A DNA stretch of 64,000 nucleotides, taken from positions 1 to 64,000 of IMG/VR virus record IMGVR_UViG_3300001460_000004. The stretch is one strand, 5' to 3'. Position numbers and translations under genes: made by a program. Below, one piece after another: positions 1,356 through 38,317 of this stretch. The notes below the pieces were generated by a model, which saw nothing but the letters and a program-made list of their open reading frames with translations, did not search any database and had not been told where the DNA came from. The stretch's first letter is position 1. Every line of letters begins with the position of its first letter.

Positions 1356-1748
1356 ATGAAAATCATGCTACATTTAAATAGAATATTAATAGTTTTTACG
1401 CTAGTGGCGTTTTCACTAGCGTATGTTAGTATGGCAAATGCACAGGAAGAAAATACAGCAAAACAATTTTATGCTAGCCAACCGTGCGATAATGCTGTAA
1501 CCATATTTAAAACCATTACACAATATAAAGAAAAATTATTATTCCAAGGGTTAGGACAACAATTTACATTGCCTAGTGGACAACTATTTTATGGAAAAAT
1601 GATGTTTTTTACTAATCAAGAGACTGGTAGTTTTACTATTGTTTCTGTATATCCAGATGGTGTTGCATGTATGGTTATGTCTGGAAAAGAATTTGAACCT
1701 TACATGGGTGAACAGCCGTATGATAAGGAACCTAGGTCAAAGGGGTGA
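1356..1748 (+). CDS. hypothetical secreted protein
   Basis: Signal peptide ending ANA; operon context. Confidence 0.6.
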   Translation: MKIMLHLNRILIVFTLVAFSLAYVSMANAQEENTAKQFYASQPCDNAVTIFKTITQYKEKLLFQGLGQQFTLPSGQLFYGKMMFFTNQETGSFTIVSVYPDGVACMVMSGKEFEPYMGEQPYDKEPRSKG

Positions 1749-1814
1749 AGTGTTATGGAAGCACGGGAGATTCCAAATCTTCAAGCTGGGGTTCGACTCC
1801 CTGCACCTCTGCCA
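1741..1814 (+). tRNA. trnW: tRNA-Trp(CCA)
   Basis: Acceptor AGGGGTG/CACCTCT, discriminator G, encoded CCA; anticodon stem GGAGA/TCTTC with loop TTCCAAA; T-loop GTTCGAC. Confidence 0.9.
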
Positions 1815-5807: not shown

Positions 5808-5897
5808 GGACAGTTGGCTGAGAGGTTTAAAGCACCGGTTTACTAAACCGACGAAGGTTAACGCCTTCCCAGGGTTCGAATCCCTGACTGTCCGCCA
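5808..5897 (+). tRNA. trnS: tRNA-Ser with anticodon ACT
   Basis: GGACAGT/ACTGTCC acceptor, G73, CCA; long variable arm GAAGG/CCTTC; anticodon loop TTACTAA. Confidence 0.85.
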
Positions 5898-6986: not shown

Positions 6987-7559
6987 ATGAATCAAACATT
7001 TATTCCTAAACGGTGGGAAAAGGAAGAGTATCAATCACGAGCTCACACTGTTTTTGAACAAGTTGATTCGTATCTTTCTACTCCCCCCAAACGTATACTT
7101 GATATTGGCTGTGGGTATGCATATATTAGTCAGCAGTTTCAAAAAAAGTATGGGACTGAGCTGTGGCTACTTGAAGGTGACTTTAATGCAACCAATGACC
7201 GCGAACGCAAAGCTAGTTGGGGTGATGTTGATACTATGAAGTTCTATTTGCCGGTTAAACAGTTAAAGAAATACTGGGACGATCAAAACATTTTGTATAA
7301 TTTTGTAGATGCTAACAATATACATATTAACAATAATTTAACATTTGATTTTGTTTGCAGTTGGTTAAGTTGCGGATATCATTATCCAGTTGCCACATAC
7401 CAATCATTAATTAAAAAACACACTAACAGTTCTAGTGTTATTATTATGGATATTAGAACAAAAACATTAAACAAGCAACAAAGTATAGAAGTTGTAAAGA
7501 AATTAGATCACGACAGTGGTAAAAGAAGTCGTTTACATTATAAATTTAAAACAAACTAG
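6987..7559 (+). CDS. class I SAM-dependent methyltransferase
   Basis: ILDIGCG motif I; FDFVCSW..C GYHY. Confidence 0.85.
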   Translation: MNQTFIPKRWEKEEYQSRAHTVFEQVDSYLSTPPKRILDIGCGYAYISQQFQKKYGTELWLLEGDFNATNDRERKASWGDVDTMKFYLPVKQLKKYWDDQNILYNFVDANNIHINNNLTFDFVCSWLSCGYHYPVATYQSLIKKHTNSSSVIIMDIRTKTLNKQQSIEVVKKLDHDSGKRSRLHYKFKTN

Positions 7560-8766
7560 TTAATTCAGGCAAGAAATCTTGTATGTTACACTTTTTCATT
7601 TTGTCCTGTAATACTATATTTTTCAAAGCTCTTTTAAACAACAGCTCGTCTTGAAATGAATGATTGTCTAAATGCATACGTATAGTTGCACTATCTGTAC
7701 ATGATAATATTGTTTGTTTTATATCTTCCCTTAATGCTCTTGCACTAAAATAATCAGGAGAATATACTGGATTTTCCAAAAATGGAATACTGTGATCATT
7801 AAACCATTGAGCTGTTTGTTCATGATACAAAATATTTAAGTTACTAATTGTATAACTTGCACTTACCATTATACCTTTATCTTGTGCAATTTTAATATTA
7901 TCAACTGTTTGATCCCAACTTAATGGATATCGCATGTATTCAAAAACTTTGCCAGTACCATCCATACTAAAACAAAAGTTTAAATTTGAAAATTGATCAA
8001 GTATGTGTTGTTGTTTTGTTGTTGGCACAAAAGATCCATTTGTTACAAAACTTATACAACACTCAGTGTTGCCAGCGGAAATTAGTTTGCGTAGTATATC
8101 CCAATTGGTTCTAATCATTGTAGGTTCGCCACCAGTAAATCCAATAAACTTTGCAGTTTTATAGTCAATGTCAATACTATCGTGATATTCTTTAACTAAG
8201 TTTACTTCGGGTATATTGGTATTGTTGTATGCGTTCTCTAGTTTTCCCCATCCACTACTACTACCTTTATTGCATGTAACACATGTAGCATTACAAAAAT
8301 TTCCAGCATCAATCTTATAATGAGTAATTACACTTTTACCAGTTTCAGCAATACGATACAATTCTAATAAATCAGTATTGGTGTAATAATCAAGTGTTGA
8401 ATTTTTAATCTGCCTATCGCTCATACGCCCAGCATCTTCTAAGCGCCAACATGCACTACACTGGTTATTTCGTTTGTTTTTTAACAAGTCTTGTTGTATT
8501 GATTCGATATCATACCCAGTTGGCAACTGACAGCAATGTACATCAGCAGGATATTCTCTACCATAAAATGGTAATACACAAAAATTTGTAATGTTGTCTA
8601 ATTGTTGCTGGTGCGATCCTAACATTTGATCTATTTCTTTAGCAACAAATGGTTCAAGATTAATACCAGATGCAAAATCTTTGTATGCAGGCCAATCCTC
8701 GCCAGACATTGCAACATAATCATTTTCGTTTATATTTTGATAGCGAGGTTTTTGTTTTACTTGCAT
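7546..8766 (-). CDS. radical SAM enzyme with N-terminal twitch/SPASM-like Cys cluster
   Basis: FCVLPF..CC..CSACW, CNATCVTC, GGEP, TNG, SMDG..YMRYP. Confidence 0.9.
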   Translation of the reverse strand: MQVKQKPRYQNINENDYVAMSGEDWPAYKDFASGINLEPFVAKEIDQMLGSHQQQLDNITNFCVLPFYGREYPADVHCCQLPTGYDIESIQQDLLKNKRNNQCSACWRLEDAGRMSDRQIKNSTLDYYTNTDLLELYRIAETGKSVITHYKIDAGNFCNATCVTCNKGSSSGWGKLENAYNNTNIPEVNLVKEYHDSIDIDYKTAKFIGFTGGEPTMIRTNWDILRKLISAGNTECCISFVTNGSFVPTTKQQHILDQFSNLNFCFSMDGTGKVFEYMRYPLSWDQTVDNIKIAQDKGIMVSASYTISNLNILYHEQTAQWFNDHSIPFLENPVYSPDYFSARALREDIKQTILSCTDSATIRMHLDNHSFQDELLFKRALKNIVLQDKMKKCNIQDFLPELTSLF

Positions 8767-10844: not shown

Positions 10845-13340
10845 TTAATTCCTCTCATATTGTTGTCTCACCATGTTGTAATGAGTTTCATCACTTGCAC
10901 CATTAAAAAATCGGGCTGAAGGATTGTCAAACACACGTTGATCTCCATAGATGTCTTTAGGTGCATAAAAGCTATTGTCTAGCATTTGCGGTTGTTGGTA
11001 TTGTCTTATTTTAGGATTATATCCTAACAAAGCAGCTCTTTCATCTTCTCCGGTATCACCTGCAAGTGCTGCTTCTACTAAATTATCCTCTAAATTTTGT
11101 TGCAATGCCAGTTGTTCTTCACTAACTTCGTTTAAATTATCTGAAATTGATTCATCTATTTGATTTTGTAGCACTTTATTAATTAGCGAGTTTAATTCTG
11201 TATTCAATGCTGCTACTACATCAAAAGTCAATACAGCATCATTTGTTGTTATTTCAGCAGTGTAACTACTAGGTGATCCATAATCAATTGTGCTAATGCC
11301 ACTGTTTAAATTATTTTCGCCTAACAATAATGATTCTGATTCACCTGATATCAGTTCAATATTGTCCCCAGATGCTTGTAAATTTGTTTGACCTGTTATG
11401 GTAAAATTGCTGTTGTTTGTATTAGATTGTTGCGATTGGGTTCCATCGCTGCTGTTATTTGAACTGTAGGATGTATCGTTTGATGTACTTCCATTATCGA
11501 TACTCGCACCACTAGAATTTTGCATATTATTGCTGTTACTATTGCTTACTTGAAAATTTCCACGGTTAGCATTGTTGTTGTTACCACTGGTTGCTAAACT
11601 ACTAGCAGCATTATCTTGTGCTATATTTTCAGCAACTCGGGCAACAGTTGCTGCCGCTGATAATGTCCTTCGTTGTTTTGAGCTTAATGTTGGTTTAGGT
11701 TCTTCAACTATTTCTGCAACTTCTTCCACATCAACATCGTCAACACTTGCTATATCAACTGATACTTCTTCAGCAATCTCTTCAACGGGTTCCTCTTTTA
11801 ATACTTTGGCAGTGTCTAATTCTTGAATTACCTCTACAGTTTCAGCTAATAATACTTCTTGTTCAATTATAACTTGTTCTTCGTTTAACTGTGTAGCGTT
11901 TTTAGGACCTGCATCCTGTACGGCTATTTCTTGTGGCAATGGTTCAGGATCATTGAGCTCAACACCAGTTGTTTGTTCAATATCAACACCAGAACTTTGT
12001 TCAATATCAACACCGGTTGTTGCTTGTACATCAATACCTTCGTTTAACTGTTCGGTAATTACGGATATTGGTTGTTGTTGCTGTTCCCTTTGTTCTATTG
12101 TTGTATCAAGTTGTGTGATGTCAACTGTGGTTAAATCAACAGTGTTGATATCAGCAACAATATCTCCAGTTGTCAAGTCAGGATTGGTATTCATATCAAT
12201 TGGATCAGTTATAACTACTATGGTACCTGCAGACTGATCTTCGGATAACCCAGTAGGCACAGTAGTATCAAAAATATCACTACCATCATTTGCAGTTTGT
12301 CCATCATCACTACCACTGGTTATAGTAGTATCGAGTCCTTGATTTTCTTCACTGATAATAACGTCAGTTTGTGTAGCAATTAACACAGTACCTTCATTAT
12401 TAACACTTAACGCAGAACCGCTACTGTCGGTGCTGTTTCCATTGCTACCACTTGTATCAAGTCCAGCTAATCCTTCATTTAATGCATCTGACATTGTGGT
12501 TGTGTTATCAAATGTTTCAGTGTTTTCACCGTTGTTAGCTGTTTGTGTACCATCATCGCTACCGGTTTCAGTGCCATCATCGTATTCATAACCAGGACAT
12601 GTTGGATTAAACTGCGGATCAATTTGACATTGTTGATCAAATTCACTTGTATTACCACTTGTATCTGGCGCTGTTTGTCCTGGATATAGATAATTAGGAT
12701 CAAAAGTATCAGTTGTTTCGGTTGTTCTGTAAACCATAATAAATTCTAAATCACCAATACCATCACCGGCAGTATCACCAGTCATAGTTGCTATTATTTC
12801 ATAGGTGTCTAACGAATTAACTCTATAAGGTGGTGGATTATCAATACTGTCTTGGTATCCATCTAATTCATTATAATTGGTATAATCTACTGAAGCACTA
12901 TAAATTGTACTGTTACCGTCTTTAATTTCCATCTTAAACATTAATTCAGCATTCGCACTTTTGTATACTTTGTATTCGTATTTCCAGCCTCTAATTTCTA
13001 AACCCAATCCGGCTTGCTGAAATGCTGCATTGAGTGCAATGGTGGCTTTGGCAAATTGTGTGGCGTATGGATCATCGTTGATAAATCTATATGAATTTGT
13101 GTTTGCATCGTAGTAAGCGGTGTCTTCGGTTAAATCAACGGCATCGGCACCATCTAGCATATTCATAGTGACAGTATTACACAGTATGTCATCAGTAAAA
13201 GTGGCTTGCCCATAGCCTGGAGCCAAATAGTCACCAGCGTAGTAACTTGCACCACAACTGTGAGTAGCAGTTTGTGCTAATGCATTAGAGCAATAAAAGG
13301 AGCAAACCAACACCGCCAACAGCTTTGAGGATTGTTGCAT
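10845..13340 (-). CDS. large secreted acidic low-complexity protein
   Basis: Signal peptide; CQIDPQFNPTCPGY motif; D/E/T/N/S-rich tracts. Confidence 0.75.
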   Translation of the reverse strand: MQQSSKLLAVLVCSFYCSNALAQTATHSCGASYYAGDYLAPGYGQATFTDDILCNTVTMNMLDGADAVDLTEDTAYYDANTNSYRFINDDPYATQFAKATIALNAAFQQAGLGLEIRGWKYEYKVYKSANAELMFKMEIKDGNSTIYSASVDYTNYNELDGYQDSIDNPPPYRVNSLDTYEIIATMTGDTAGDGIGDLEFIMVYRTTETTDTFDPNYLYPGQTAPDTSGNTSEFDQQCQIDPQFNPTCPGYEYDDGTETGSDDGTQTANNGENTETFDNTTTMSDALNEGLAGLDTSGSNGNSTDSSGSALSVNNEGTVLIATQTDVIISEENQGLDTTITSGSDDGQTANDGSDIFDTTVPTGLSEDQSAGTIVVITDPIDMNTNPDLTTGDIVADINTVDLTTVDITQLDTTIEQREQQQQPISVITEQLNEGIDVQATTGVDIEQSSGVDIEQTTGVELNDPEPLPQEIAVQDAGPKNATQLNEEQVIIEQEVLLAETVEVIQELDTAKVLKEEPVEEIAEEVSVDIASVDDVDVEEVAEIVEEPKPTLSSKQRRTLSAAATVARVAENIAQDNAASSLATSGNNNNANRGNFQVSNSNSNNMQNSSGASIDNGSTSNDTSYSSNNSSDGTQSQQSNTNNSNFTITGQTNLQASGDNIELISGESESLLLGENNLNSGISTIDYGSPSSYTAEITTNDAVLTFDVVAALNTELNSLINKVLQNQIDESISDNLNEVSEEQLALQQNLEDNLVEAALAGDTGEDERAALLGYNPKIRQYQQPQMLDNSFYAPKDIYGDQRVFDNPSARFFNGASDETHYNMVRQQYERN

Positions 13341-14439
13341 TATTATCTTCCTTTTCGGTTACTATTGCTTTATCGCTGGGATGTACAATAGGTTCCGGTT
13401 CTCCTTCTTTAACACCGTCCCATTCTTCTGTAGCTTCTTCGCCAATTTTACCTTTAAACGGACAAGGTGTACCAGCCATCATCATTGCATCAAAAATACG
13501 TTTGTCTTGACACATCAATGCAATAGCTGCAACTTTCATTCCCATATTGTACAGTGTTTTTGATTGCTTTAGCATTTCACAATTCATATCTCTTACATGA
13601 GATCCTGCGGCAATACCTACAATTTGTGTTTGTACTGACCCAGTAACACTGGTTGTACATGTATCATTGCCGCCTGCGTTTACTGTAGGTGCAATAGCAC
13701 TTGGGGGAGGTGCAATAATTGTTTGTTCCTGCTTTACATTGCTGTTGTTATTATTGTTATTAGTATTTTCAGCAGTGCTGTTAACTGTAGTATTGTTGGT
13801 ATTTTGGTTTGTGTTAGTATTTGTATTGGTGTTTACATTAGTGTTATTGCTAGTACTGTTTACTGTTTGGTCAACTGTACTTGTACTAGTACTGTTTACT
13901 GTTTGGTCAACTGTACTTGTGCTAGTGTTAACATTAGTATTGTTATTAGTGTTTGTGTTGGTTGTACCACCACTTAATATGTTATTATTGGTATTTGTGT
14001 TTGTGTTCGTACTGGTACCGGTGTAATTTGTAGTGTTATTATTTGTATTAGAATTTGTATTGGTGTTTACATTAGTGTTATTGTTGGTATTGGTACTAGT
14101 GCTTGTGTTTGTATTGGTGTTGTTGTTTGTATTGGTATTGTTGTTTGTATTGGTATTGGTTGTACCACCACTTAATATGTTATTATTGGTATTTGTGTTA
14201 GTGTTAGTGTTTGTATTGTTATTAGTGTTTGTGTTGGTACTGTTAATAGTAGTGTTATTAGTGTTGGTATTTGTACCTGTGGTAGTGACTGCACTAGTTG
14301 TTGAAGTAGTGCTATCAGTTAATACACAATCAATGCCGGTTGTTGCACAGTCTGATGTGTTAACAACTTGTGCTGACGTAGGATTTGTGTACAAAACAGC
14401 TATAAGAAAAACAGTAAAATAGGTTAGTTTAATATTCAT
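13285..14439 (-). CDS. secreted Thr/Asn-repeat protein with Cys-containing C-terminal domain and C-terminal hydrophobic tail
   Basis: Signal peptide; (TN)n repeats; PPPSAIAP..C..C..MCQD..GTPCP; GGAG RBS supports a start at 14439. Confidence 0.8.
   Translation of the reverse strand: MNIKLTYFTVFLIAVLYTNPTSAQVVNTSDCATTGIDCVLTDSTTSTTSAVTTTGTNTNTNNTTINSTNTNTNNNTNTNTNTNTNNNILSGGTTNTNTNNNTNTNNNTNTNTSTSTNTNNNTNVNTNTNSNTNNNTTNYTGTSTNTNTNTNNNILSGGTTNTNTNNNTNVNTSTSTVDQTVNSTSTSTVDQTVNSTSNNTNVNTNTNTNTNQNTNNTTVNSTAENTNNNNNNSNVKQEQTIIAPPPSAIAPTVNAGGNDTCTTSVTGSVQTQIVGIAAGSHVRDMNCEMLKQSKTLYNMGMKVAAIALMCQDKRIFDAMMMAGTPCPFKGKIGEEATEEWDGVKEGEPEPIVHPSDKAIVTEKEDNNATILKAVGGVGLLLLLL
13735..14310 (-). repeat. coding low-complexity repeats (TNTNTNNN; NILSGGTT x2; STSTVDQTVN x2)
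   Basis: Direct repeats visible in DNA and protein. Confidence 0.9.
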
Positions 14440-14458
14440 TAAAGTCGAGCTCCACAAT

Positions 14459-15174: not shown

Positions 15175-15193
15175 AAACTACAAAAAATTTTTC

Positions 15194-15224
15194 TTGACAT
15201 CTTGAACAATTTATGTTATAAATA
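15194..15224 (+). promoter_or_regulatory. overlapping sigma70 and late promoter for the tmRNA
   Basis: TTGACA(15194)-N17-TATAAATA(15217-15224). Confidence 0.75.
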
Positions 15225-15228
15225 ACAT

Positions 15229-15540
15229 TGTAACGTTGAAGCAATTCAAACGCTATACAGGACTCGGGGGCAGTACCCGACGCCTCCACCATAAACACAT
15301 CTAGACTGGTTTTTATATCTGATCAGATAGATGCATTGACAACTTAGGTGTGTTTATGATGGGGGCGAACTAGGATCGACTGGTGGTTAATAGAGTTAGT
15401 GGAGTTATCCGGATCTAAGCACGGTTATCGCGAAGAAAACTTATAATTGCAAATGACAATTATGCGCCAGCAATGGCAATTGCAGCCTAATTAGGTATGC
15501 GGGGTATGGGTTCCACCTAGCAACAGAACGGGCCTGCTAC
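15229..15540 (+). ncRNA. ssrA: two-piece (circularly permuted) tmRNA, alphaproteobacterial type; tag ANDNYAPAMAIAA
   Basis: Acceptor piece ends CGCCTCCACCA (15291) with T-arm GGGGCAGTACCC; intervening hairpin ATAAACACATCTA/TAGGTGTGTTTAT; coding piece starts GGGGGCGAA (15361) giving G3.U70; tag ORF 15449-15490. Outer ends approximate. Confidence 0.93.
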
Positions 15541-15561
15541 AATTTTACACACCGTAAACGG

Positions 15562-15590
15562 TTGACTTTCCACCTTTTCTATGCTATATA
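15562..15590 (+). promoter_or_regulatory. sigma70-type promoter
   Basis: TTGACT-N17-TATATA with extended TG. Confidence 0.6.
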
Positions 15591-15630
15591 TTATAGTATA
15601 AACAGACACAAACACACTGAAAGAAATAAT

Positions 15631-15996
15631 ATGAATAAATCTCCAGAACCCATCGGTTGGGCAAATACACTAACATCACTTACTGGCGAAGTTAAGTTCC
15701 TTTGGAGTTTAGTGATGACAATTGAAAATTCACCACTACGAAAATTAGATCCAATAGTTGCTCATATGGTATTCCAGACCTTAGCATTTGTTTGGTCAGG
15801 TATTTTTGGCCTAATGGTTGGCAGTATTTGGGCAGTAGGCATAAGCGGTATAGCACATGTGATTTTTATTGCTGGTATTGTTATTACTGCTACAACATTC
15901 CGCCAAGCAGATCAAAATCCAAATGTTGTAAACAAGATGTTTACTCCACGTGACAATGTTACTAGTGGACGTATGAACGGCGGGGAACATGAGTAA
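15631..15996 (+). CDS. hypothetical membrane protein (2 TM)
   Basis: Hydrophobic helices; start reassigned to the ATG downstream of the promoter. Confidence 0.65.
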   Translation: MNKSPEPIGWANTLTSLTGEVKFLWSLVMTIENSPLRKLDPIVAHMVFQTLAFVWSGIFGLMVGSIWAVGISGIAHVIFIAGIVITATTFRQADQNPNVVNKMFTPRDNVTSGRMNGGEHE

Positions 15997-16150
15997 TCCA
16001 AACGAACCGTATCACAACAAAGGTGTAGGACTAGCATTCTTAATTATTATTATTGGAATGGTAGGTATGCCTATCCTTGGATCAGCGATTGCTTATCCAG
16101 ATCAGTGTAAACAATCTATTCTTATTCCTTGTTTAGGATTAGAGAAATGA
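15989..16150 (+). CDS. small membrane protein, 53 aa (not in ORF track)
   Basis: MSNPNEPYHNKGVGLAFLIIIIGMVGMPILGSAIAYPDQCKQSILIPCLGLEK; overlaps both neighbours. Confidence 0.6.
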   Translation: MSNPNEPYHNKGVGLAFLIIIIGMVGMPILGSAIAYPDQCKQSILIPCLGLEK

Positions 16151-16443
16151 AGTGGGCAATAGTAATGTATGCTTTTCTTGGGTTTCAGGATAGTAATCAA
16201 ACGCAACAGGTTATAAGTTGGAATCTACCTTTTCAAACTATGGGTCAGTGTATTCAGTTTCATGATAAAAATCAATTAAAACTTAGACAAGGTGTGGTAA
16301 CACACGGTGCTGAAATGTATGGTAAAACTCCTTATGTAAAAGAAATGGGTTGTGTAAGAGCAGAAGCTTATGCAGAAAGCCCTGACGAATTACCTACACT
16401 AACAGAGCGTCAGAAACTATTTGAAGGCGGTCCAACAATATGA
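16147..16443 (+). CDS. hypothetical secreted protein
   Basis: MKWAIVMYAFL N-terminus; Cys pair; ATGA coupling. Confidence 0.6.
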   Translation: MKWAIVMYAFLGFQDSNQTQQVISWNLPFQTMGQCIQFHDKNQLKLRQGVVTHGAEMYGKTPYVKEMGCVRAEAYAESPDELPTLTERQKLFEGGPTI

Positions 16444-16631
16444 AATACTCAATATTAAATGTTGACACAGGTGATGTCCAAGAAATGTTTTTTGAAGATA
16501 CATTACAATTTACAAACTGGTTTAAAATTGCACCTGGTAATTTTAAATCGTTAGGCAAAGTAGACGCATACTTACCAACAAGACATGTGAGGATGCAAAA
16601 CAAAGAGGAGTTTGCTGGATGGGGCAGTTAA
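16440..16631 (+). CDS. hypothetical protein
   Basis: Translationally coupled ORF. Confidence 0.55.
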   Translation: MKYSILNVDTGDVQEMFFEDTLQFTNWFKIAPGNFKSLGKVDAYLPTRHVRMQNKEEFAGWGS

Positions 16632-16831
16632 CACCTAGGAAAGAAGCAGAACTTGAAGCAGAACGTACTTACGAAGCGTTCTTAGTATGGGCAAAGAGAG
16701 TAACACTCGGTGCTATATTCTTTTTGCTTGTAGTCGTTGTTGGTTGTAATAGCGGCGTTGAAGAAGGTCCACGTAAAACTGGATCGGGTTATAACGGAGG
16801 CCAATATTCTCCTACAAATCTTAAAATATAA
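16619..16831 (+). CDS. single-TM protein resembling aa3-type cytochrome c oxidase subunit IV
   Basis: EAERTYEAFLVWAKRVTLGAIFFLLVVVVGCNS resembles the alphaproteobacterial COX IV pattern; GAGGAG RBS. Confidence 0.5.
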   Translation: MGQLTPRKEAELEAERTYEAFLVWAKRVTLGAIFFLLVVVVGCNSGVEEGPRKTGSGYNGGQYSPTNLKI

Positions 16832-16841
16832 AGGATAACAA

Positions 16842-17285
16842 ATGAATAAATCAATATTAATAGTTATGATTGTAACATTTTTTGCTACTATGTTTGTACA
16901 AGCTGCGAATGCAGAAGATATAACTATTGAAATGCTTAACAAGCGTGATGACGGTGCTAAAATGGTATTCAGTGAAGATATTGCAAGAATTGACGTTGGT
17001 GATACTATTACATGGGTACCAACTGCAAAAGGACACAATGTACATTTTACTGCGGGTCCGGACGGATGGGATATTCCTAAGAAGTCAAAGAACAACAAAG
17101 AAGTTGAAATTACATTTGACACACCTGGCGTATACTTTTATCAGTGTACACCACACAAAGGCATGGGCATGATTGCTCTTGTTGTTGTAGGAGACGACAC
17201 ATCAAATGCAGATACAATTATGAAAGCAAGCAAAGCCAAAGGCAAAAGCAAAAAGAAACTTAAAGGATTACTTGAAGAACTATGA
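16842..17285 (+). CDS. pseudoazurin (type I blue copper protein)
   Basis: Signal peptide; MLNK...MVF...GDTITW...GHN; CTPHKGMGM copper ligands. Confidence 0.92.
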   Translation: MNKSILIVMIVTFFATMFVQAANAEDITIEMLNKRDDGAKMVFSEDIARIDVGDTITWVPTAKGHNVHFTAGPDGWDIPKKSKNNKEVEITFDTPGVYFYQCTPHKGMGMIALVVVGDDTSNADTIMKASKAKGKSKKKLKGLLEEL

Positions 17286-17686
17286 GTTTTGTAAAACATA
17301 TTCCTGAGTTTTGTTTGAGTCATTGGTTACTGCGAATACCGCTAGCCATTGTATTCATACAACAGGGATTGAGTAAATTTCCAGTAATACTAGAAGATGC
17401 CGAAGCATTTGAACTTCCATACATAGTATGGTGGTTCGCTGCATATGGAGAACTAGGCGCAGGTATTGGTTTACTTGTNGCTGGTTTATTAGCATCTTGG
17501 TCTTTGACAAGTGACTATGGCGATATGCTAACACGTTTTTGTGGTATTACAATTTGTAGTATTATGACAGGTGTTATCTGGGTAGGACAACCAGAAAGTT
17601 TCTGGGACGTTATACTATATGACAACCTCCACGTACTGTTATGGGTAGGTGGATTATTTTTTGCTCTAAGAGGTAATAGAACATGA
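17282..17686 (+). CDS. DoxX-family membrane protein
   Basis: LLRIPLAIVFIQQGLSKF; ELGAGIGLL; four TM segments. Confidence 0.8.
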   Translation: MSFVKHIPEFCLSHWLLRIPLAIVFIQQGLSKFPVILEDAEAFELPYIVWWFAAYGELGAGIGLLXAGLLASWSLTSDYGDMLTRFCGITICSIMTGVIWVGQPESFWDVILYDNLHVLLWVGGLFFALRGNRT

Positions 17687-17811
17687 TTGAAATTATAGGT
17701 TACTTTACCGATCATGTAGTATCACGTATGTTTGATGATATTCACGATGCTATTGAATTCCGAGATCTACTTGATGCAAACTATGTACGAGTAGAATGGA
17801 TACAACGATGA
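17683..17811 (+). CDS. small hypothetical protein, 42 aa (not in ORF track)
   Basis: MIEIIGYFTDHVVSRMFDDIHDAIEFRDLLDANYVRVEWIQR; ATGA overlaps. Confidence 0.55.
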   Translation: MIEIIGYFTDHVVSRMFDDIHDAIEFRDLLDANYVRVEWIQR

Positions 17812-17990
17812 AGCCCAATAACAATTTTAAATTGGATATAAAAGATATTGATACAATCGAACAAGGATTGTTTCAATTGCAAAAAGAAACAAGTTGTCAT
17901 AATGGCAAACGAGTTATTATTGATGTTCTTGCAAAATTACATCATCAAAAAATTTGGTATAGGCCAAAAAATAACTACGTTAGTGGTTGA
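17796..17990 (+). CDS. hypothetical protein
   Basis: Coupled ORF ending KIWYRPKNNYVSG; true start may be 17808. Confidence 0.55.
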   Translation: MDTTMKPNNNFKLDIKDIDTIEQGLFQLQKETSCHNGKRVIIDVLAKLHHQKIWYRPKNNYVSG

Positions 17991-18015
17991 CAAATACCAA
18001 TTTAACCACTATATT
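17987..18015 (+). promoter_or_regulatory. sigma70-type promoter
   Basis: TTGACA-N17-TATATT. Confidence 0.7.
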
Positions 18016-18044
18016 AGTAGTACACACATACACAGGAGAATACA

Positions 18045-18353
18045 ATGTCAATAGAAACAAAATATGGTGAAGCCATCTTTAAACAAACACAGGAAGTTGC
18101 TGAAATGTTTAAAGCCGCAATGCCAAAAATCACAACAAACAAAAATGGTTATGAAATCCGCACCAAGGTGCTGGAGATGGCACAGAACAATGTATGGCAG
18201 GATTACCACGCCAAGTTTGCAGGATACGAAACAACAGTTACCAAAATGGGCACGGAAGACTTTGTTATTAAGGTAGAGATGCCTACTGTTCCTGGGGCGG
18301 ATGCTGTGCTAGAAGCGGCGGAGAAGTTTTACGCTTTTGTAAACCAAAAATAG
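18045..18353 (+). CDS. hypothetical phage protein
   Basis: AGGAG RBS; KNGYEIR...AEKFYAFV. Confidence 0.7.
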   Translation: MSIETKYGEAIFKQTQEVAEMFKAAMPKITTNKNGYEIRTKVLEMAQNNVWQDYHAKFAGYETTVTKMGTEDFVIKVEMPTVPGADAVLEAAEKFYAFVNQK

Positions 18354-18428
18354 TGTTGCATATGAACAACATTTGTTAATACAATATTCCAACTCTTAGG
18401 ATATTTAAAGATTTAAAAAAACACACTT

Positions 18429-18463
18429 TATAAATAAAACGTGGGCAATAAATGCCCACGTTT
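18429..18463 (+). promoter_or_regulatory. late promoter and 5' stem-loop upstream of the porin
   Basis: TATAAATA 18429-18436; AAACGTGGGCA/TGCCCACGTTT hairpin. Confidence 0.65.
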
Positions 18464-18508
18464 CTTTGATACTCTATCAAAAACAATCCCAGGAAAGGAT
18501 ATTTTTTA

Positions 18509-19264
18509 ATGCGTAATGTATTTATTACAGCAATGGCTCTTGCTTTGTCAAGCACCGCAGCTTTTGCAAACCCTACAATCTCAGGAGAAGTTGAATTGAA
18601 ATTTGCTGAATCAGCAAATGAAAATATTGGCGGATCTATGGGCGTTGACTTAAACGTTGATGCAGGAATGGGAGCAGTTGCTCTTGAATTTTCTGTTGCA
18701 GACGGTGGTGATCTTACACTTGATAATTGGGCTGTAGGAACAAGTGTTTCAGGCATTGGTGTACATTTTGGTGATGACTTAGGTGTTATGCCGGGTGCTG
18801 AAGGCGAACACACACTAGCTGCTCCAGTGATGGCAGAGTCTCTACGTGTAACAGTTGGCGATGCACAAGTTGCATTTGGTCTTACTGATTGGAGTACTGA
18901 CGTCACAGACATTAGTAACATCCAAGGTTCATACAAAGTTGGAGCTTATACTTTTGCAGGCGACTATAACTTAGATAGCGAAAATATTGTAGTAGGTGCC
19001 GGTTTAGGTGGTTTTAATCTAGGAGTTGCTGACGCTTCTGGTGCAATTACATATGACACAGATGCAGAAGTATTTGGGTTTGAAGGTGTACTAGCTTCAA
19101 ACAGGTTAACTGCTTATGCTAACGGTGACGACGAGGATCCACTACAAAATATTGGTGGCGATTATGCCTACAACATGGGCCCAGCCGATGTTACTTTTGG
19201 TGCTAACTATAATCTTGATGAAGAAGAAATTACCCCAACTGCAACAATTGGTTTTAGCTTCTAA
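18509..19264 (+). CDS. outer-membrane beta-barrel porin
   Basis: Signal peptide ending AFA; amphipathic beta strands; acidic; C-terminal IGFSF BAM-type signal. Confidence 0.8.
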   Translation: MRNVFITAMALALSSTAAFANPTISGEVELKFAESANENIGGSMGVDLNVDAGMGAVALEFSVADGGDLTLDNWAVGTSVSGIGVHFGDDLGVMPGAEGEHTLAAPVMAESLRVTVGDAQVAFGLTDWSTDVTDISNIQGSYKVGAYTFAGDYNLDSENIVVGAGLGGFNLGVADASGAITYDTDAEVFGFEGVLASNRLTAYANGDDEDPLQNIGGDYAYNMGPADVTFGANYNLDEEEITPTATIGFSF

Positions 19265-19290
19265 GCAACACTTGTATTGCAGACAAACTT

Positions 19291-19317
19291 AAAAGCAACG
19301 TTCGCGTTGCTTTTTTT
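19291..19317 (+). terminator. rho-independent terminator
   Basis: AAAAGCAACG-TTCG-CGTTGCTTTTTTT. Confidence 0.9.
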
Positions 19318-19497
19318 ACACCGTTAGTAATACTGGCATAATTAAATTATGCAGCGCCAACAATCAGTTGACGCCGGTTTTAAATCTAAAGTGACGCTTG
19401 ATATGTTATTATCTTTACTGTTCTATTAGTACATAACGCCGCTTCAACCGTATGTAAATCTAGCAATTTTTAACAAACAATTTACGAGGAGAATATA

Positions 19498-20868
19498 ATG
19501 GATGCAATGATTATTGGATTATTGATCTTTATTGCGATCATGGGTTATGTGAGCTATAACATTAACCGAAAATATCAAACATCAAAAGAAGGTTACTTAC
19601 TAGCAGGCAGAGATTTGTCAATCTTTGATATTACAATGAGTATTACAGCAAGCTGGACATTTGCACTAGGTGTGTTGATGATTAGTTTTTTTACTTTTAC
19701 TAAAGGTGCAGCTGGGTGGACATGGTTTGTAGTTCCACAACTAGGCGGCTTGGCTTTAATGGCACTCCTGGCATGGAATATTCTTAAAAAAATGCCTAAT
19801 GGTTTTACTACTATTCAGTTTGTTCGAGAGCGTTATAAAGATAAACGTGTAACTGCATTTTTTCAATTGGTTGCAATTCTCGGTGTATTAAATGCATTAA
19901 TCGGTAACTTAACTGCACTAGGAAATATCAGTGCATATATGAGTGGCGGACTTGTAAGCTATGAAGTATTAGTATGTGTAATGAGTCTTGGTATTCTAGG
20001 GTATACACTCTGGGGAGGGTTAAAATCAAGCGTTGCTACTGACAAAGTACAAACTGGTTTCCTTGTACTACTAGCAGTATTTGGTTTTGGATCTTGGATT
20101 GCATATGGCAACCCAGAAGGTATTAGTGCTACACTTTCAAGTGTAGAAGGTGCAAGTCCAGTATTTGGTAGTATTATGTATGCAATGGGTGCTAACTTAT
20201 TAATGCTAATGAGTGCAAGTCTTGTAAACGACAATGGACTATATCAACGGGTACTTGCTGTTAAAGACAAAGCTCGTGCCTGGCAAGGATTTGTTTGGGC
20301 TGGTGCATTGTTTACAGTTATTGCACTAGGTATTGGAGCATTGGCTGCAACTGGTATCCACACTGGTGTTGAAGTAGTTGACGGTAAATTAAGTACAACT
20401 GCAACACTCGAAGCATTGTTTGGTGGGGTTGGTCTAATTATTATGACATTAGCTATTTTAAGTGCTAGTGCTAGTACTATTGATACAGCATACAATAGTT
20501 TTGGTGCTATGGTTGCAAACGATATGCTTCCCAATAATGAAGATCCAGTACGTACTAGTCGACTAGCAATGTGTGGGCTGTTTATTTTTGTTACAGCCGT
20601 TGCATTATTTAAAATTGATATTTGGATCATCTTTACAACATTTGCACTATTGCGATTAATTACAGTTGCACCAATGGTAATTGGCATTGTAAGTAACTGG
20701 AGTTTTAACACTACACCTATTCTTATTGGTATTGGTCTTGCATTAGTTTATGCATTGTGTGTTAAAACAGGAAATGCATTACCACTAAGTGGTACAACAA
20801 ATAATTTGATTGTACTATTGCTCCCGGCATTAGGAACATTTTTAGCAATTCGTAAAGAACATACTTAA
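19498..20868 (+). CDS. sodium:solute symporter (SSS) family transporter
   Basis: YLLAGR, SITASW, YTLWGGLKSSVATDKVQ, YQRVLA, SASASTID; about 13 TM. Confidence 0.92.
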   Translation: MDAMIIGLLIFIAIMGYVSYNINRKYQTSKEGYLLAGRDLSIFDITMSITASWTFALGVLMISFFTFTKGAAGWTWFVVPQLGGLALMALLAWNILKKMPNGFTTIQFVRERYKDKRVTAFFQLVAILGVLNALIGNLTALGNISAYMSGGLVSYEVLVCVMSLGILGYTLWGGLKSSVATDKVQTGFLVLLAVFGFGSWIAYGNPEGISATLSSVEGASPVFGSIMYAMGANLLMLMSASLVNDNGLYQRVLAVKDKARAWQGFVWAGALFTVIALGIGALAATGIHTGVEVVDGKLSTTATLEALFGGVGLIIMTLAILSASASTIDTAYNSFGAMVANDMLPNNEDPVRTSRLAMCGLFIFVTAVALFKIDIWIIFTTFALLRLITVAPMVIGIVSNWSFNTTPILIGIGLALVYALCVKTGNALPLSGTTNNLIVLLLPALGTFLAIRKEHT

Positions 20869-20870
20869 TA

Positions 20871-22010
20871 ATGAATCCGTGGGATAACCCTAAATTAGGA
20901 TACTATCGTGTTGGAAACAGCACGATGGTATCTAAAATTACTGCCTTTGAAGAAGGTACAAAACAAAATATTCACCCAACTTGGCATTTTGACGACCATA
21001 TATGGAATGCACAAGATTGGAAAACTGAACCCCAAATTGATATATTAGAATTGTACAAAATGCGGGCTCGACAAATACGAGACACATATGATATAGTTGT
21101 AATTGATTATAGTGCCGGTAGCGACAGCCAAACTATAGTAAATGCATTTTTAGACAGTGGGTGTTTTATTGATGAAATAGTGACAGTCTGGAATAGCACT
21201 ATAGACAATAATGTTACCCAAAATAGTGCAGATCCCACCAACATCGAAAATGAATTTAAACATACAACTGCGCCTGGCATAAACGAAATTTTAAAACGCT
21301 CACCTAAAACTAATATTAATTATATTGACATCAGTGAGCAAGCAATACAGTCATATAACCACAGAGAAGATTATACGTGGATTTACCAAACTGCAGAGCA
21401 TTTAAATCCTATATACCAAACTCGATGGGATCCAACAATTAAAAAACCAATACAACAAATACTAGATACTGGTAAAAGTGTTGCATTTGTTAGTGGTATT
21501 GATAAACCCCGAGTAACAATTAAAGACGGAAAATATGCACTATATTTTATAGATAGTCTAGTTAACAATGGTAAAATTGCTAAACCAGGTCATATGTACG
21601 ACAACTATGATAAGGTTTACTTTTTTTGGTCAAGTGACTTTCCTGAAATAGTAATTAAACAAGCTCACTTGGTACGCAAATGGTTTAAAGCTAATCCAGG
21701 GCTAGAACCAATGTTAAATTGGGGCACCAAAACCTATGATAATTTAAGAGTATACGAAACACTAGTGAGAAGTATTGTTTATCCAGAATGGCCAGTGAAT
21801 ACATTTCAATGTTTAAAAGTAACAAGTCCAATTTGGACTGAATGGGACAACTATTTTTGGAAAAACTTTGGAAATAAAGATGAAGGTAAACAATGGTTTG
21901 CTGGGATTGAATACATTGTTAATAATATTGATCACAAATATTTAGACTTCAAAGATGGACGACTAAATAATTTTACTGGAATGATAAATGGACTCTTTGA
22001 AATAGAATGA
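20871..22010 (+). CDS. PP-loop (adenine nucleotide alpha hydrolase-like) protein
   Basis: YSAGSDS variant of SGGxDS; GIDKP. Confidence 0.6.
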   Translation: MNPWDNPKLGYYRVGNSTMVSKITAFEEGTKQNIHPTWHFDDHIWNAQDWKTEPQIDILELYKMRARQIRDTYDIVVIDYSAGSDSQTIVNAFLDSGCFIDEIVTVWNSTIDNNVTQNSADPTNIENEFKHTTAPGINEILKRSPKTNINYIDISEQAIQSYNHREDYTWIYQTAEHLNPIYQTRWDPTIKKPIQQILDTGKSVAFVSGIDKPRVTIKDGKYALYFIDSLVNNGKIAKPGHMYDNYDKVYFFWSSDFPEIVIKQAHLVRKWFKANPGLEPMLNWGTKTYDNLRVYETLVRSIVYPEWPVNTFQCLKVTSPIWTEWDNYFWKNFGNKDEGKQWFAGIEYIVNNIDHKYLDFKDGRLNNFTGMINGLFEIE

Positions 22011-38010: not shown

Positions 38011-38110
38011 TGTCTATTGAATGTTGAAACATACGATAAGGTATACTACCTATTCCCATATAAGCAGTCCAAAATACTATGTTATATAAAATAATTTCTA
38101 TTTCTTCCAT
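38003..38110 (-). CDS. 35-aa membrane peptide (not in ORF track)
   Basis: MEEIEIILYNIVFWTAYMGIGSIPYRMFQHSIDNA; AGGAGG RBS; fills the operon gap. Confidence 0.55.
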   Translation of the reverse strand: MEEIEIILYNIVFWTAYMGIGSIPYRMFQHSIDNA

Positions 38111-38317
38111 TTACAACCTCCTTATTATTACTGTGCCATATCTTGGCCAGGATATTTCGCAACCAATTGTTTCGAGTGCATGTGTTACTAATTCAATCAT
38201 CTTATGGCTATTTCCGCATATAATAGTTAATGGTAACGCATGTTGATTTAAATACACAAAGTTTTCTACTTCGCGGTCAACTTGATAATGTCTTATGCCG
38301 TGCAAGTCTAATTGCAT
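38111..38317 (-). CDS. stand-alone Smr-domain protein
   Basis: LDLHG...IICGNS. Confidence 0.7.
   Translation of the reverse strand: MQLDLHGIRHYQVDREVENFVYLNQHALPLTIICGNSHKMIELVTHALETIGCEISWPRYGTVIIRRL

What the first reader, a model, noticed from the sequence alone, without database searches (positions are those of the whole stretch)
16619..17686. Candidate respiratory auxiliary module: COX IV-like, pseudoazurin, DoxX
Three adjacent genes: a single-TM protein resembling alphaproteobacterial aa3 oxidase subunit IV, an exported pseudoazurin with all four copper ligands, and a DoxX membrane protein. Inference: a heterotroph-phage analogue of cyanophage petE, supplying a copper electron carrier that needs no iron. 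Alternatively it could feed sulfur oxidation or denitrification.
Basis: partly seen in the sequence, partly recalled or inferred. Interest (0 to 1): 0.6.

Follow-up and report, generated by a model that had tools for sequence, protein, structure and literature searches.

The report
Phage respiratory island: pseudoazurin, oxidase-subunit mimic
A large uncultured marine phage carries, side by side, a copper electron-carrier protein (pseudoazurin), a small membrane protein that looks like subunit IV of the host's aa3 cytochrome oxidase, and a DoxX membrane protein. This suggests that phages of non-photosynthetic ocean bacteria tamper with host respiration much as cyanophages tamper with photosynthesis.

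Summary
All three ORFs are real, tightly packed genes on a 230-kb tailed jumbo phage, and all are under purifying selection (dN/dS 0.09-0.21).

- **Pseudoazurin:** the middle gene is a secreted pseudoazurin with the H65/C102/H105/M110 copper site and the C-terminal helices. Its nearest cellular relatives are marine Alphaproteobacteria, where it often sits in sox or sulfite-dehydrogenase clusters.
- **DoxX:** the third gene passes Pfam DoxX. It is 65-73% identical to a gene of a low-GC marine alphaproteobacterial lineage.
- **COX IV likeness:** the first gene misses the Pfam COX4_pro_2 cut-off (15.9 vs 22 bits), but several other tests point the same way.
  - 32 of 35 family members hit COX4_pro_2 as their top family.
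  - The family profile, run over five whole genomes, hit only one place, a genuine subunit IV gene.
  - The hhalign score beat all 200 block shuffles.
  - A complex model with Paracoccus CoxI and CoxIII scored 0.77 against 0.01 for the best control.
  - It differs from true subunit IV in lacking the invariant His and in having a conserved periplasmic tail.
- **Synteny:** the trio recurs, in shuffled order, in close phage relatives. Pseudoazurin also travels alone in many other phages.
- **An extra partner:** a small 2-TM protein upstream is paired in bacteria with pseudoazurin or cytochrome c.
- **Prior record:** GenBank phages and the searchable literature hold no counterpart.

Function is inferred, not shown.

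The parts
15628..15996 (+). 2-TM small membrane protein ('TM144' family). The longest ORF starts at TTG 15562 inside the tmRNA, so ATG 15628 is the more likely start. It ends in a conserved GGEHE.
   Evidence: No Pfam, NCBIfam or PHROG hit. It lies within 4 kb of pseudoazurin in 25/80 viral loci, of DoxX in 36/80 and of ORF1 in 35/80. Cellular homologues sit directly upstream of pseudoazurin in SAR116 (L125). In 6 of 17 copies in another alphaproteobacterial order they sit directly upstream of an 87-97-aa cytochrome c.
15989..16150 (+). 53-aa single-TM protein that travels with the island
   Evidence: Found in 21/80 DoxX-centred and 19/80 ORF1-centred viral loci. No family match above noise.
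16440..16631 (+). 63-aa soluble protein. Its stop overlaps the ORF1 start, and it usually precedes ORF1 in relatives.
   Evidence: The g16440>ORF1 order is kept even where the pair has moved downstream of DoxX (L002, L004).
16619..16831 (+). ORF1, a COX IV-like bitopic membrane protein. It has a conserved N-terminal motif (A10, E13-E15, T17, F/Y18, F21, K26-R27), a TM helix at about residues 28-42, and a conserved periplasmic tail (C43-N-S-G-V-E ... Y58-N-G-x-Q-Y-x-P65).
   Evidence: - PF07835 scores 15.9 bits, below the cut-off; 32/35 family members hit it, best E 1.3e-4.
- hhalign against true subunit IV gives 83% probability. Against 31 true copies the score is 23.3, versus a shuffle mean of 13.2 and maximum of 21.6, with 0/200 reaching it.
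- The family profile hits only one place in five genomes, and it is a true COX4 gene.
- The complex model scores 0.77 against a best control of 0.01.
- Atlas clusters of this family are 18-38% annotated as COX4_pro_2.
- dN/dS is 0.11-0.16.
16842..17285 (+). Secreted pseudoazurin. The signal peptide covers roughly residues 1-24, the type-1 Cu ligands are H65, C102, H105 and M110, and the C-terminal helical extension is Lys-rich.
   Evidence: 1BQK, E 5.6e-25, residues 26-143 against 2-118. At least 104 viral stretches carry a relative and 5404 protein clusters match. dN/dS is 0.21. A metatranscriptome contig is identical at 17099-17249.
17282..17686 (+). DoxX-family four-helix inner-membrane protein, translationally coupled to the pseudoazurin gene by an ATGA overlap
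   Evidence: PF07681 scores 30 bits against a cut-off of 23.6. The model has pLDDT 85 with four long helices. At least 184 viral stretches carry a relative. Cellular homologues at 65-73% identity occur in five low-GC alphaproteobacterial genomes. dN/dS is 0.09-0.15.
17683..17990 (+). Two small ORFs (42 aa and 64 aa) that recur with the island
   Evidence: Present in relatives. No family match.
18509..19264 (+). Exported beta-barrel-like outer-membrane protein with a signal peptide and a C-terminal ...GFSF. It is a frequent downstream neighbour of the island.
   Evidence: Homologues at 38-60% identity lie in L003-L006 and in 13/80 ORF1-centred loci. No Pfam hit. A metatranscriptome contig is identical at 18959-19231.

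Best explanation
This is a phage-borne auxiliary respiratory island. The jumbo phage expresses a periplasmic copper electron carrier (pseudoazurin) together with small inner-membrane proteins.

- **ORF1:** it resembles subunit IV of the alphaproteobacterial aa3 cytochrome c oxidase and probably docks, through its conserved N-terminal motif and TM helix, at the CoxI/CoxIII interface.
- **The 2-TM protein:** in bacteria it is the genomic partner of a soluble carrier, either pseudoazurin or cytochrome c.
- **DoxX:** it belongs to a family of redox-associated, probably quinone-linked, membrane proteins.

The likely effect is to keep periplasmic electron flow going during infection without needing haem iron. 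The electrons would come from the bc1 complex or from periplasmic dehydrogenases such as Sor/Sox, and end at the terminal oxidase.

**Shown:** gene identities, copper site, export signal, selection, recurrence in phages, alphaproteobacterial origin.

**Inferred:** that ORF1 joins the oxidase, that pseudoazurin feeds aa3, that DoxX takes part, and any benefit to the phage.
For: - **Phage identity:**
- **Pseudoazurin identity and ligands:**
- **ORF1 to COX IV:** the Pfam top hit in 32/35 members. hhalign gives 83% and beats 200/200 block shuffles. The reciprocal six-frame search of five genomes hits only one place, the true subunit IV gene of G002. The complex with COX1B_PARDE and COX3_PARDE scores ipSAE 0.77 against a best control of 0.01; that mark was reached by 58 of 80 solved complexes and 2 of 110 mismatched pairs. 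Partner pLDDT is at least 63 and the runs agree in at least 64% of contacts. The contacts centre on the conserved T17/Y18/F21 motif.
- **Co-occurrence:** with 3 kb on both sides, DoxX-centred loci carry ORF1 in 22/32, pseudoazurin in 16/32 and the 2-TM gene in 16/32, always on one strand.
- **Gene packing:** overlapping start and stop codons.
- **Cellular pairing:** the 2-TM family is paired with pseudoazurin or with cytochrome c.
- **Selection:** purifying selection on all three genes.
- **Transcripts:** fragments identical to the pseudoazurin, OMP and 2-TM genes occur in two metatranscriptome libraries.
Against: - ORF1 fails the Pfam gathering score, lacks the invariant His of true subunit IV and has an extra tail.
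- A profile search of 1.84 billion proteins found no true COX4.
- The complex pass may reflect memory of the solved four-subunit Paracoccus oxidase, and the controls need not have been membrane helices.
- Pseudoazurin stands alone in most pseudoazurin-carrying phage loci.
- In 80 cellular loci pseudoazurin is never next to DoxX or ORF1.
- Cellular DoxX has no conserved redox neighbour.
- To my knowledge, electron donation from pseudoazurin to an aa3 oxidase is not an established reaction.
- The RNA-library contigs could be DNA carry-over.
Confidence: 0.5

Rival explanations
1. The pseudoazurin serves periplasmic sulfur oxidation. It would accept electrons from host SorAB sulfite dehydrogenase or the Sox system, or donate to NirK in low oxygen, rather than acting as a bc1-to-aa3 shuttle. 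The neighbouring membrane genes would be incidental to that role.
For: - In SAR116 genomes the homologue sits inside a sox cluster: ArsR, thioredoxin, SoxY, SoxZ, a SoxC-like Mo enzyme, a cytochrome c, pseudoazurin and a SoxB-like protein.
- In Pelagibacteraceae it follows a SorA-like Mo enzyme, a cytochrome c and Moa genes.
- A preprint places a pseudoazurin between nirK and ccoN in SAR11 isolates (10.1101/2025.06.18.660415).
- The DoxX family is named after a thiosulfate:quinone oxidoreductase component (my own knowledge).
Against: - No Sox, Sor or NirK gene was found on the held 230 kb. A Cu-oxidase_3 search was negative and nothing of the kind lies in the island.
- In the phage the conserved companions are a COX IV-like protein and the 2-TM protein, not sulfur enzymes.
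- This rival largely concerns the electron source and is compatible with aa3 as the sink.
Confidence: 0.25
2. The three genes are independent cargo in a hypervariable 'moron' island and do not work together. The pseudoazurin is a general carrier. ORF1 is a small lipoprotein or membrane peptide, for example for superinfection exclusion. DoxX is a stress or quinone-detoxification protein.
For: - Gene order is shuffled among relatives, and pseudoazurin is mostly alone.
- A 104-aa ORF in the island (16129-16443) has no homologue in any related locus.
- ORF1 has a lipobox-like V-V-G-C, and its profile matches signal peptides in PDB.
- One family member weakly hits Phage_lipoprotein at E 0.092.
- The surrounding region also encodes a porin-like protein and a solute symporter.
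Against: - Co-occurrence in close relatives is far above what unlinked genes would give: ORF1 is within about 3.5 kb of DoxX in 22/32 loci.
- The genes are always on the same strand with overlapping stop and start codons.
- All of the identifiable members point to periplasmic or membrane electron transfer.
- The ORF1 N-terminal 25 residues would be discarded from a lipoprotein, yet they are as conserved as the rest.
- At least three divergent family representatives lack the Cys but keep both motifs.
Confidence: 0.25

Closest known systems
Cyanophage PetE (plastocyanin) and other cyanophage electron-transport AMGs
   Same: A phage-encoded, secreted type-1 copper electron carrier of the cupredoxin fold. 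It matches phrog_515 'PetE plastocyanine' at E 9.3e-10 and cyanophage PetE genes at 30-34% identity. Both are presumed to sustain host electron transport during infection.
   Different: - It belongs to the pseudoazurin subfamily, not plastocyanin: TIGR02375 102.6 bits against TIGR02656 40.3 bits.
- It has the C-terminal helical extension.
- Its relatives are heterotrophic marine Alphaproteobacteria, and the phage carries an alpha-type tmRNA.
- It travels with oxidase-like and DoxX membrane proteins, which cyanophage petE does not.
- No such gene is in the 50,697 GenBank phage records.
Bacterial pseudoazurin (e.g. Achromobacter cycloclastes 1BQK; Paracoccus pantotrophus)
   Same: Full-length alignment at E 5.6e-25, identical ligand spacing (G-H-N ... 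C-T-P-H-x-G-M-G-M), a Lys-rich surface and C-terminal helices.
   Different: It is phage-encoded, scores just under the NCBIfam equivalog cut-off (102.6 against 109.85), and its physiological partners are unknown. The classical partners are nitrite reductase, N2O reductase and cytochrome c peroxidase (my own knowledge).
aa3-type cytochrome c oxidase subunit IV of Alphaproteobacteria (Pfam COX4_pro_2; Paracoccus/Rhodobacter CtaH)
   Same: A single TM helix preceded by a T-[FYW]-x-x-F juxtamembrane motif, and the same predicted N-in topology. The profile-level similarity is reciprocal. It is modelled against CoxI and CoxIII.
   Different: - It is below the Pfam cut-off.
- The His that is invariant in all 31 true copies examined is Ala/Glu here.
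- It is 70 aa rather than 36-45 aa, with a conserved 27-residue periplasmic tail containing a lipobox-like Cys.
- It occurs only on viral contigs; there were no close copies in five alphaproteobacterial genomes.
DoxX / MauE-type redox-associated membrane proteins
   Same: It passes Pfam DoxX and models as a four-helix membrane protein. MauE-type relatives are encoded beside the cupredoxin amicyanin in methylamine-utilisation clusters (my own knowledge).
   Different: No DoxA/DoxD partner, thioredoxin-like partner or sulfurtransferase is nearby. There is no solved structure to compare: the PDB sequence search was empty and no fold match reached E <= 0.001. The biochemical function of this subfamily is unknown.

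Membership tests
Pseudoazurin (TIGR02375 / PF00127 cupredoxin) | Cupredoxin domain above the Pfam gathering score | tested here: met
   PF00127 scores 63.2 bits against 21.2.
Pseudoazurin (TIGR02375 / PF00127 cupredoxin) | Type-1 Cu ligands His, Cys, His, Met with C-x2-H-x4-M spacing | tested here: met
   H65, C102, H105 and M110 are invariant in 14 viral copies. They align with H40/C78/H81/M86 of 1BQK.
Pseudoazurin (TIGR02375 / PF00127 cupredoxin) | C-terminal alpha-helical extension that separates pseudoazurin from plastocyanin and amicyanin | tested here: met
   TIGR02375 matches across 1-114 of 116 positions. The 1BQK alignment runs to residue 118 of 124.
Pseudoazurin (TIGR02375 / PF00127 cupredoxin) | NCBIfam equivalog cut-off | tested here: not met
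   102.6 bits against a cut-off of 109.85. It is a near miss, and pseudoazurin is still by far the best model.
Pseudoazurin (TIGR02375 / PF00127 cupredoxin) | Copper binding and reversible one-electron redox activity | not testable with these tools
   Needs purified protein, with UV-vis/EPR and redox titration.
aa3 oxidase subunit IV (Pfam COX4_pro_2) | Score at or above the Pfam gathering threshold | tested here: not met
   15.9 bits against 22. The best family member reaches E 1.3e-4. True copies score 22-56 bits.
aa3 oxidase subunit IV (Pfam COX4_pro_2) | Juxtamembrane T-[FYW]-x-x-F motif followed by one TM helix, N-terminus inside | tested here: met
   T17-Y18-E-A-F21 followed by K26-R27 and the TM helix. 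The alignment covers 25-30 columns and beats 200/200 shuffles. Topology is inferred from the positive-inside rule only.
aa3 oxidase subunit IV (Pfam COX4_pro_2) | Conserved His three residues before the Thr | tested here: not met
   The His is invariant in 31 true copies. The phage family has Ala14 at that position.
aa3 oxidase subunit IV (Pfam COX4_pro_2) | Physical association with CoxI and CoxIII | tested here: inconclusive
   The model scores 0.77 against a best control of 0.01, a mark reached by 58 of 80 solved complexes and 2 of 110 mismatched pairs. Partner pLDDT is at least 63 and run agreement at least 64%. The result is in silico, may come from memory of the solved complex, and used Paracoccus subunits rather than the unknown host's.
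aa3 oxidase subunit IV (Pfam COX4_pro_2) | About 36-58 aa, ending at or just after the TM helix | tested here: not met
   ORF1 is 70 aa with a conserved 27-residue tail.
DoxX (PF07681) | Score above the gathering threshold | tested here: met
   30 bits against 23.6.
DoxX (PF07681) | Small polytopic (four-helix) membrane protein | tested here: met
   AlphaFold model with pLDDT 85 and helices at 12-30, 47-64, 74-101 and 107-130.
DoxX (PF07681) | Defined redox partner (DoxA/TQO, SseA/SodA, MauD-like) | tested here: not met
   None lies in the island or beside the cellular homologues.
Bacterial lipoprotein (rival for ORF1) | Lipobox [LVI][ASTVI][GAS]C after a short charged n-region, with Cys within about 15-35 residues of the start | tested here: inconclusive
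   V-V-G-C43 fits the lipobox. However, the Cys is at position 43 after a conserved 27-residue N-terminal segment, and at least three divergent family representatives lack the Cys. No lipoprotein predictor was available.
Cyanophage PetE plastocyanin | Plastocyanin subfamily membership | tested here: not met
   TIGR02656 scores 40.3 bits against 87.85. Identity to cyanophage PetE is 30-34%.

The most novel reading that the evidence does not exclude
The phage makes a substitute subunit IV that inserts into the host aa3 cytochrome c oxidase. Its conserved periplasmic tail (C-N-S-G-V-E ... Y-N-G-E-Q-Y-x-P) recruits or positions the phage pseudoazurin. Terminal respiration would then be rewired to a copper-only, haem-free carrier route during infection. 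This would be the first case of a virus remodelling a host respiratory complex by subunit substitution. The 2-TM and DoxX proteins would be further parts of the same rewiring.
Probability: 0.15. Interest if true: 0.85.

Novelty: new variant of a known kind. Interest (0 to 1): 0.62.

Why it matters
Auxiliary electron-transport genes are textbook for cyanophages but scarcely described for phages of the heterotrophic bacteria that dominate ocean respiration. Three points follow.

- **Scale:** a pseudoazurin has thousands of close marine metagenomic relatives (5404 protein clusters), many of them on viral contigs. It is linked in one phage lineage to a look-alike of an oxidase subunit. This implies that phages may alter how carbon is respired, and how much iron that costs, in infected Alphaproteobacteria.
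- **An open question becomes testable:** the role of bacterial oxidase subunit IV is a long-standing puzzle, since its deletion in Paracoccus was reported without obvious effect (Witt & Ludwig 1997, cited in PMC4742706). The phage variant offers a handle on it.
- **A new gene pairing:** an uncharacterised 2-TM protein family turns out to be the genomic partner of soluble periplasmic carriers, either pseudoazurin or cytochrome c.

Tried and rejected
- **DNA search against phages:** blastn of 15500-21000 against GenBank phages found nothing.
- **Protein search against phages:** tblastn of DoxX and ORF1 found nothing.
- **ORF1 against PDB:** the profile matched only antibody signal peptides, and no oxidase subunit IV chain.
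- **ORF1 against 1.84 billion representatives:** the profile recovered only its own viral family and fragments of it, with no true COX4. Plain HMMER therefore cannot bridge the two families.
- **Host assignment from the tmRNA:** only the conserved cores match five candidate alphaproteobacterial genomes.
- **Pseudoazurin tree:** viral and cellular copies interleave and support is weak around the window's copy (SH-aLRT 84). No donor can be named.
- **DoxX fold search in PDB:** no match at E <= 0.001. The best rows have TM scores of 0.4-0.5, among them TMEM35A/NACHO.
- **Partner enzymes on the phage:** no NirK-type Cu-oxidase_3 and no SCO1 copper chaperone. The record is only about 66% complete.
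- **Promoter and terminator scan:** counts are not above shuffles. Near-consensus promoters at 14585 and 17987 are leads only.
- **Literature:** eight searches found no report of phage pseudoazurin, DoxX or oxidase subunit genes.
- **Cellular synteny:** none of 80 cellular pseudoazurin loci has DoxX or ORF1 nearby.
- **Steps not run:** I did not test pseudoazurin binding to ORF1, DoxX or the 2-TM protein, because the single complex job went to ORF1 with the oxidase. A positive control with genuine COX4_PARDE could not be run for the same reason.
Full report
**What the window is**

The window is the first 64 kb of a 230-kb linear IMG/VR virus record that CheckV rates about 66% complete. The rest of the record encodes a portal protein, a large terminase, an SbcC-like nuclease, ribonucleotide reductase and tail fibres. 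The terminase is 49-53% identical to those of the jumbo myophages PA5oct, Phosso and Atu_ph07. G+C is about 36%. An alphaproteobacterial-type permuted tmRNA lies at 15190-15538 (132 bits, gathering score 50), just upstream of the finding. The same stretch occurs in marine and brine metagenomes from 17 studies.

**The observation**

The three ORFs are as described.

- ORF1 (16619-16831) has a strong Shine-Dalgarno site, and its start overlaps the stop of the preceding 63-aa ORF.
- The pseudoazurin gene (16842-17285) and the DoxX gene (17282-17686) overlap by ATGA. DoxX overlaps the next ORF in the same way.
- The 'X' in DoxX is one ambiguous base (n at 17479) in a GTN codon, so the residue is Val.
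- Two independent DNA data sets hold contigs identical over 16595-17540, which rules out an assembly chimera.
- dN/dS against phage homologues is 0.11-0.16 for ORF1, 0.21 for pseudoazurin and 0.09-0.15 for DoxX.

**Pseudoazurin**

- It scores 63 bits on PF00127. TIGR02375 (pseudoazurin) scores 102.6 bits over nearly the full model, just under the equivalog cut-off of 109.85. Amicyanin, halocyanin and plastocyanin models score 40-50 bits.
- Against PDB, the best hits are all pseudoazurins. The top one is 1BQK at E 5.6e-25, with query residues 26-143 against chain residues 2-118. G-H-N and C-T-P-H-x-G-M-G-M are aligned.
- H65, C102, H105 and M110 are invariant in viral copies.
- Residues 1-24 form a typical Sec signal ending A-N-A, and the mature start matches residue 1-2 of the crystal chains.
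- More than 100 viral stretches and 5404 protein clusters are related.
- In the 50,697 GenBank phage records, only cyanophage PetE matches, at 30-34% identity.

**Origin and cellular context of the pseudoazurin**

A scan of one genome per prokaryote species returned almost only marine Alphaproteobacteria: Rhodobacteraceae (Ascidiaceihabitans, 68-71%), Pelagibacteraceae, SAR116, OCS116 and low-GC 'Rhodospirillaceae'. Two 'non-alpha' bins look like mis-binned phage contigs.

In the tree, viral and cellular copies interleave. The window's copy groups with DoxX-linked viral copies and with the Ascidiaceihabitans clade. In that clade the gene has lower G+C than its flanks and sits among a methyltransferase and replication-like genes. 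Support around the window's copy is weak, so no donor can be named.

Cellular neighbourhoods are varied, but two recur:

- In SAR116 the gene lies inside a sox cluster: ArsR, thioredoxin, SoxY, SoxZ, a SoxC-like molybdoenzyme, a cytochrome c, pseudoazurin and a SoxB-like protein.
- In Pelagibacteraceae it follows a SorA-like molybdoenzyme, a cytochrome c and Moa genes.

A preprint reports a pseudoazurin between nirK and ccoN in SAR11 isolates. So in cells the protein looks like a general periplasmic carrier tied to sulfur oxidation and, in places, to nitrite reduction.

**ORF1**

Pfam's only meaningful hit is COX4_pro_2, at 15.9 bits and below the cut-off of 22. The family is large: 109 clusters at 90% identity and 72 representatives at 50%. 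All members are 60-80 aa and all come from metagenomic or viral sources. Three segments are conserved:

- an N-terminal A-x3-E-A-E-x-T-[FY]-x2-F-x2-W-x-K-R;
- a TM helix;
- a tail, G-C-N-S-G-V-E ... Y-N-G-E-Q-Y-x-P.

The evidence for a link with subunit IV comes from several directions.

- 32 of 35 members hit COX4_pro_2, best E 1.3e-4.
- ESM Atlas clusters of this family are 18-38% annotated with it.
- Genuine subunit IV genes were taken from five marine alphaproteobacterial genomes (32-56 bits). hhalign against them gives 83% probability over 25 columns.
- Against 31 genuine copies the score is 23.3 (probability 34%). Two hundred shuffles that keep the N, TM and C blocks give a mean of 13.2, sd 1.7, maximum 21.6.
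- The ORF1 profile, run over the six-frame translation of five genomes, hits exactly one place. That place is the genuine subunit IV gene of G002.
- A complex model with Paracoccus CoxI and CoxIII scores 0.77 against a best control of 0.01. That mark was reached by 58 of 80 solved complexes and 2 of 110 mismatched pairs. Partner pLDDT is at least 63 and the runs agree in at least 64% of contacts. The lowest-error contacts run from A14, E15, T17, Y18 and F21 to CoxI 205-214 and CoxIII 81-92.

The tool warns that such a pass can come from memory of the solved four-subunit enzyme. It therefore shows likeness rather than binding.

The evidence against membership is also clear.

- The Pfam cut-off is missed.
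- The His that is invariant in true copies is absent.
- ORF1 has a tail that true copies lack.
- A HMMER profile search of 1.84 billion proteins found no true COX4.

I therefore call ORF1 COX IV-like and do not file it as a family member.

The lipoprotein reading remains open. V-V-G-C43 fits a lipobox, and the profile resembles signal peptides. Three things argue for a full-length bitopic protein instead: the 27-residue conserved N-segment, the late position of the Cys, and at least three divergent representatives that lack the Cys but keep both motifs.

**DoxX**

The gene passes Pfam DoxX and models confidently as a four-helix membrane protein. It has no solved relative by sequence, and no fold match reached E <= 0.001. 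At least 184 viral stretches are related. Five genomes of one low-GC alphaproteobacterial group carry homologues at 65-73% identity in ordinary, variable contexts. Members of that group also hold pseudoazurins about 60% identical to the phage's. The role of DoxX here is inferred only from the family's reputation and from its translational coupling to the pseudoazurin gene.

**Synteny**

The figures below cover loci with at least 3 kb on both sides.

| Loci centred on | Number | With pseudoazurin | With DoxX | With ORF1 | With the 2-TM gene |
|---|---|---|---|---|---|
| Pseudoazurin | 48 | n/a | 8 | 2 | 12 |
| DoxX | 32 | 16 | n/a | 22 | 16 |
| ORF1 | 35 | 11 | 8 | n/a | 12 |

All the genes are on one strand, but their order varies. 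One variant is pseudoazurin > DoxX > 63-aa ORF > ORF1. That variant is also seen as a contig joint in the same samples. The trio is therefore a recurrent, shuffling island in the close phage lineage, while pseudoazurin alone is carried by many more phages. In 80 cellular loci neither DoxX nor ORF1 is adjacent to pseudoazurin.

**An extra member**

The ORF at 15628-15996 is a 2-TM protein with no known family. It is the neighbour that is also conserved in cells.

- In SAR116 a 97-aa homologue lies directly upstream of pseudoazurin.
- In another alphaproteobacterial order, 6 of 17 copies lie 9-34 nt upstream of an 87-97-aa signal-peptide cytochrome c with C-x-x-C-H.

Pairing with either of two interchangeable soluble carriers argues that it belongs to the same functional context.

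**Expression**

Contigs from two metatranscriptome libraries are identical to parts of the pseudoazurin, porin-like and 2-TM genes. This is weak evidence, because DNA carry-over is possible and contigs cannot show strand or level.

**Mechanism**

The account that fits best has four parts, all inferred.

- The phage adds a haem-free periplasmic carrier.
- It adds a variant of the oxidase's small subunit that docks on CoxI/CoxIII through the conserved N-terminal motif.
- It adds two further small membrane proteins.
- Together they keep electrons flowing to oxygen while host protein synthesis declines, possibly at lower iron cost.

Whether the electrons come from bc1, from Sor/Sox, or from quinol by way of DoxX is unknown. 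Donation from pseudoazurin to aa3 has not, to my knowledge, been demonstrated.

**Novelty**

No GenBank phage record holds these genes, and eight literature searches found no description. Phage electron-transport AMGs are a known kind. A respiratory version in a heterotroph-infecting jumbo phage, with an oxidase-subunit look-alike, is a new variant of that kind.

Noticed in passing
window 15190-15538 (+): A phage-encoded, permuted alphaproteobacterial-type tmRNA (RF01849, 132 bits; tag peptide ANDNYAPAMAIAA) lies immediately upstream of the island. Only its conserved cores match the tmRNAs of five candidate host genomes.
   Followed up: partly
window 15628-15996; L125 3484-3777; L341 1513-1743 with 1218-1481: An uncharacterised 2-TM protein family is the immediate upstream neighbour of pseudoazurin in SAR116 and in phages. 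In another alphaproteobacterial order it is the immediate upstream neighbour of a small cytochrome c. This pairing with soluble carriers appears to be undescribed.
   Followed up: partly
window 18509-19264 and 19498-20868 (+): The phage also encodes an exported porin-like protein ending in ...GFSF, which is conserved in relatives. It also encodes a 456-aa sodium/solute-symporter-like transporter (phrog_20720; TIGR00813, 48.8 bits). Together these suggest wider remodelling of the host envelope.
   Followed up: partly
window 36505-48220 (-) and 7546-8766 (-): A run of five or six radical-SAM proteins lies next to a Nol-like carbamoyltransferase (phrog_1601, E 6e-99), with another radical-SAM gene at 7546. 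This may be a modification or small-molecule pathway.
   Followed up: no
window 13285-14457 (-) and 56335-63693 (-): There is a 390-aa exported protein made largely of Thr/Asn repeats, and a 2452-aa ORF that may continue past the window end. Neither has a family match.
   Followed up: no
window 1741-1814 and 5808-5897 (+): Two phage tRNA genes: Trp(CCA), and a long-arm Ser with the unusual anticodon ACT.
   Followed up: no
G000 221588-222874 and 222843-223217 (L398 1432-2721, 2687-3061): An exported 429-aa protein carries a C-V-V-C-H haem-c motif (cytochrome c domain at 20-22 bits, below the cut-off). It is followed by an IscU/NifU_N Fe-S scaffold gene (174 bits). This is further redox cargo on the same phage.
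   Followed up: partly
L003 2297-4454: In a related phage contig, GAPDH-like and class I aldolase-like genes (judged from their sequences only) and a phosphoribosyltransferase-like gene lie directly upstream of the ORF1-pseudoazurin-DoxX trio.
   Followed up: no
L111 (335-kb contig of a 'Neomarinimicrobiota' MAG) and L110 ('Rhodobacteraceae' bin, GC 0.34): Both look like phage contigs binned into bacterial MAGs. They show dense small same-strand ORFs, phage-like G+C, and island genes nearby.
   Followed up: partly
window 17690 joined to 16572 in runs X2 and X3: In the same metagenomes, contigs carry the alternative gene order pseudoazurin > DoxX > 63-aa ORF > ORF1. Gene-order variants of the island therefore coexist.
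   Followed up: partly
window 16129-16443 (+): A 104-aa ORF inside the island has no homologue in any of the 80 related pseudoazurin loci. It may be a recent insertion.
   Followed up: no
protein cluster P0097: One ORF1 cluster is recorded on a contig of about 140 Mb, presumably phage DNA inside a eukaryote assembly. I neither fetched nor examined it.
   Followed up: no
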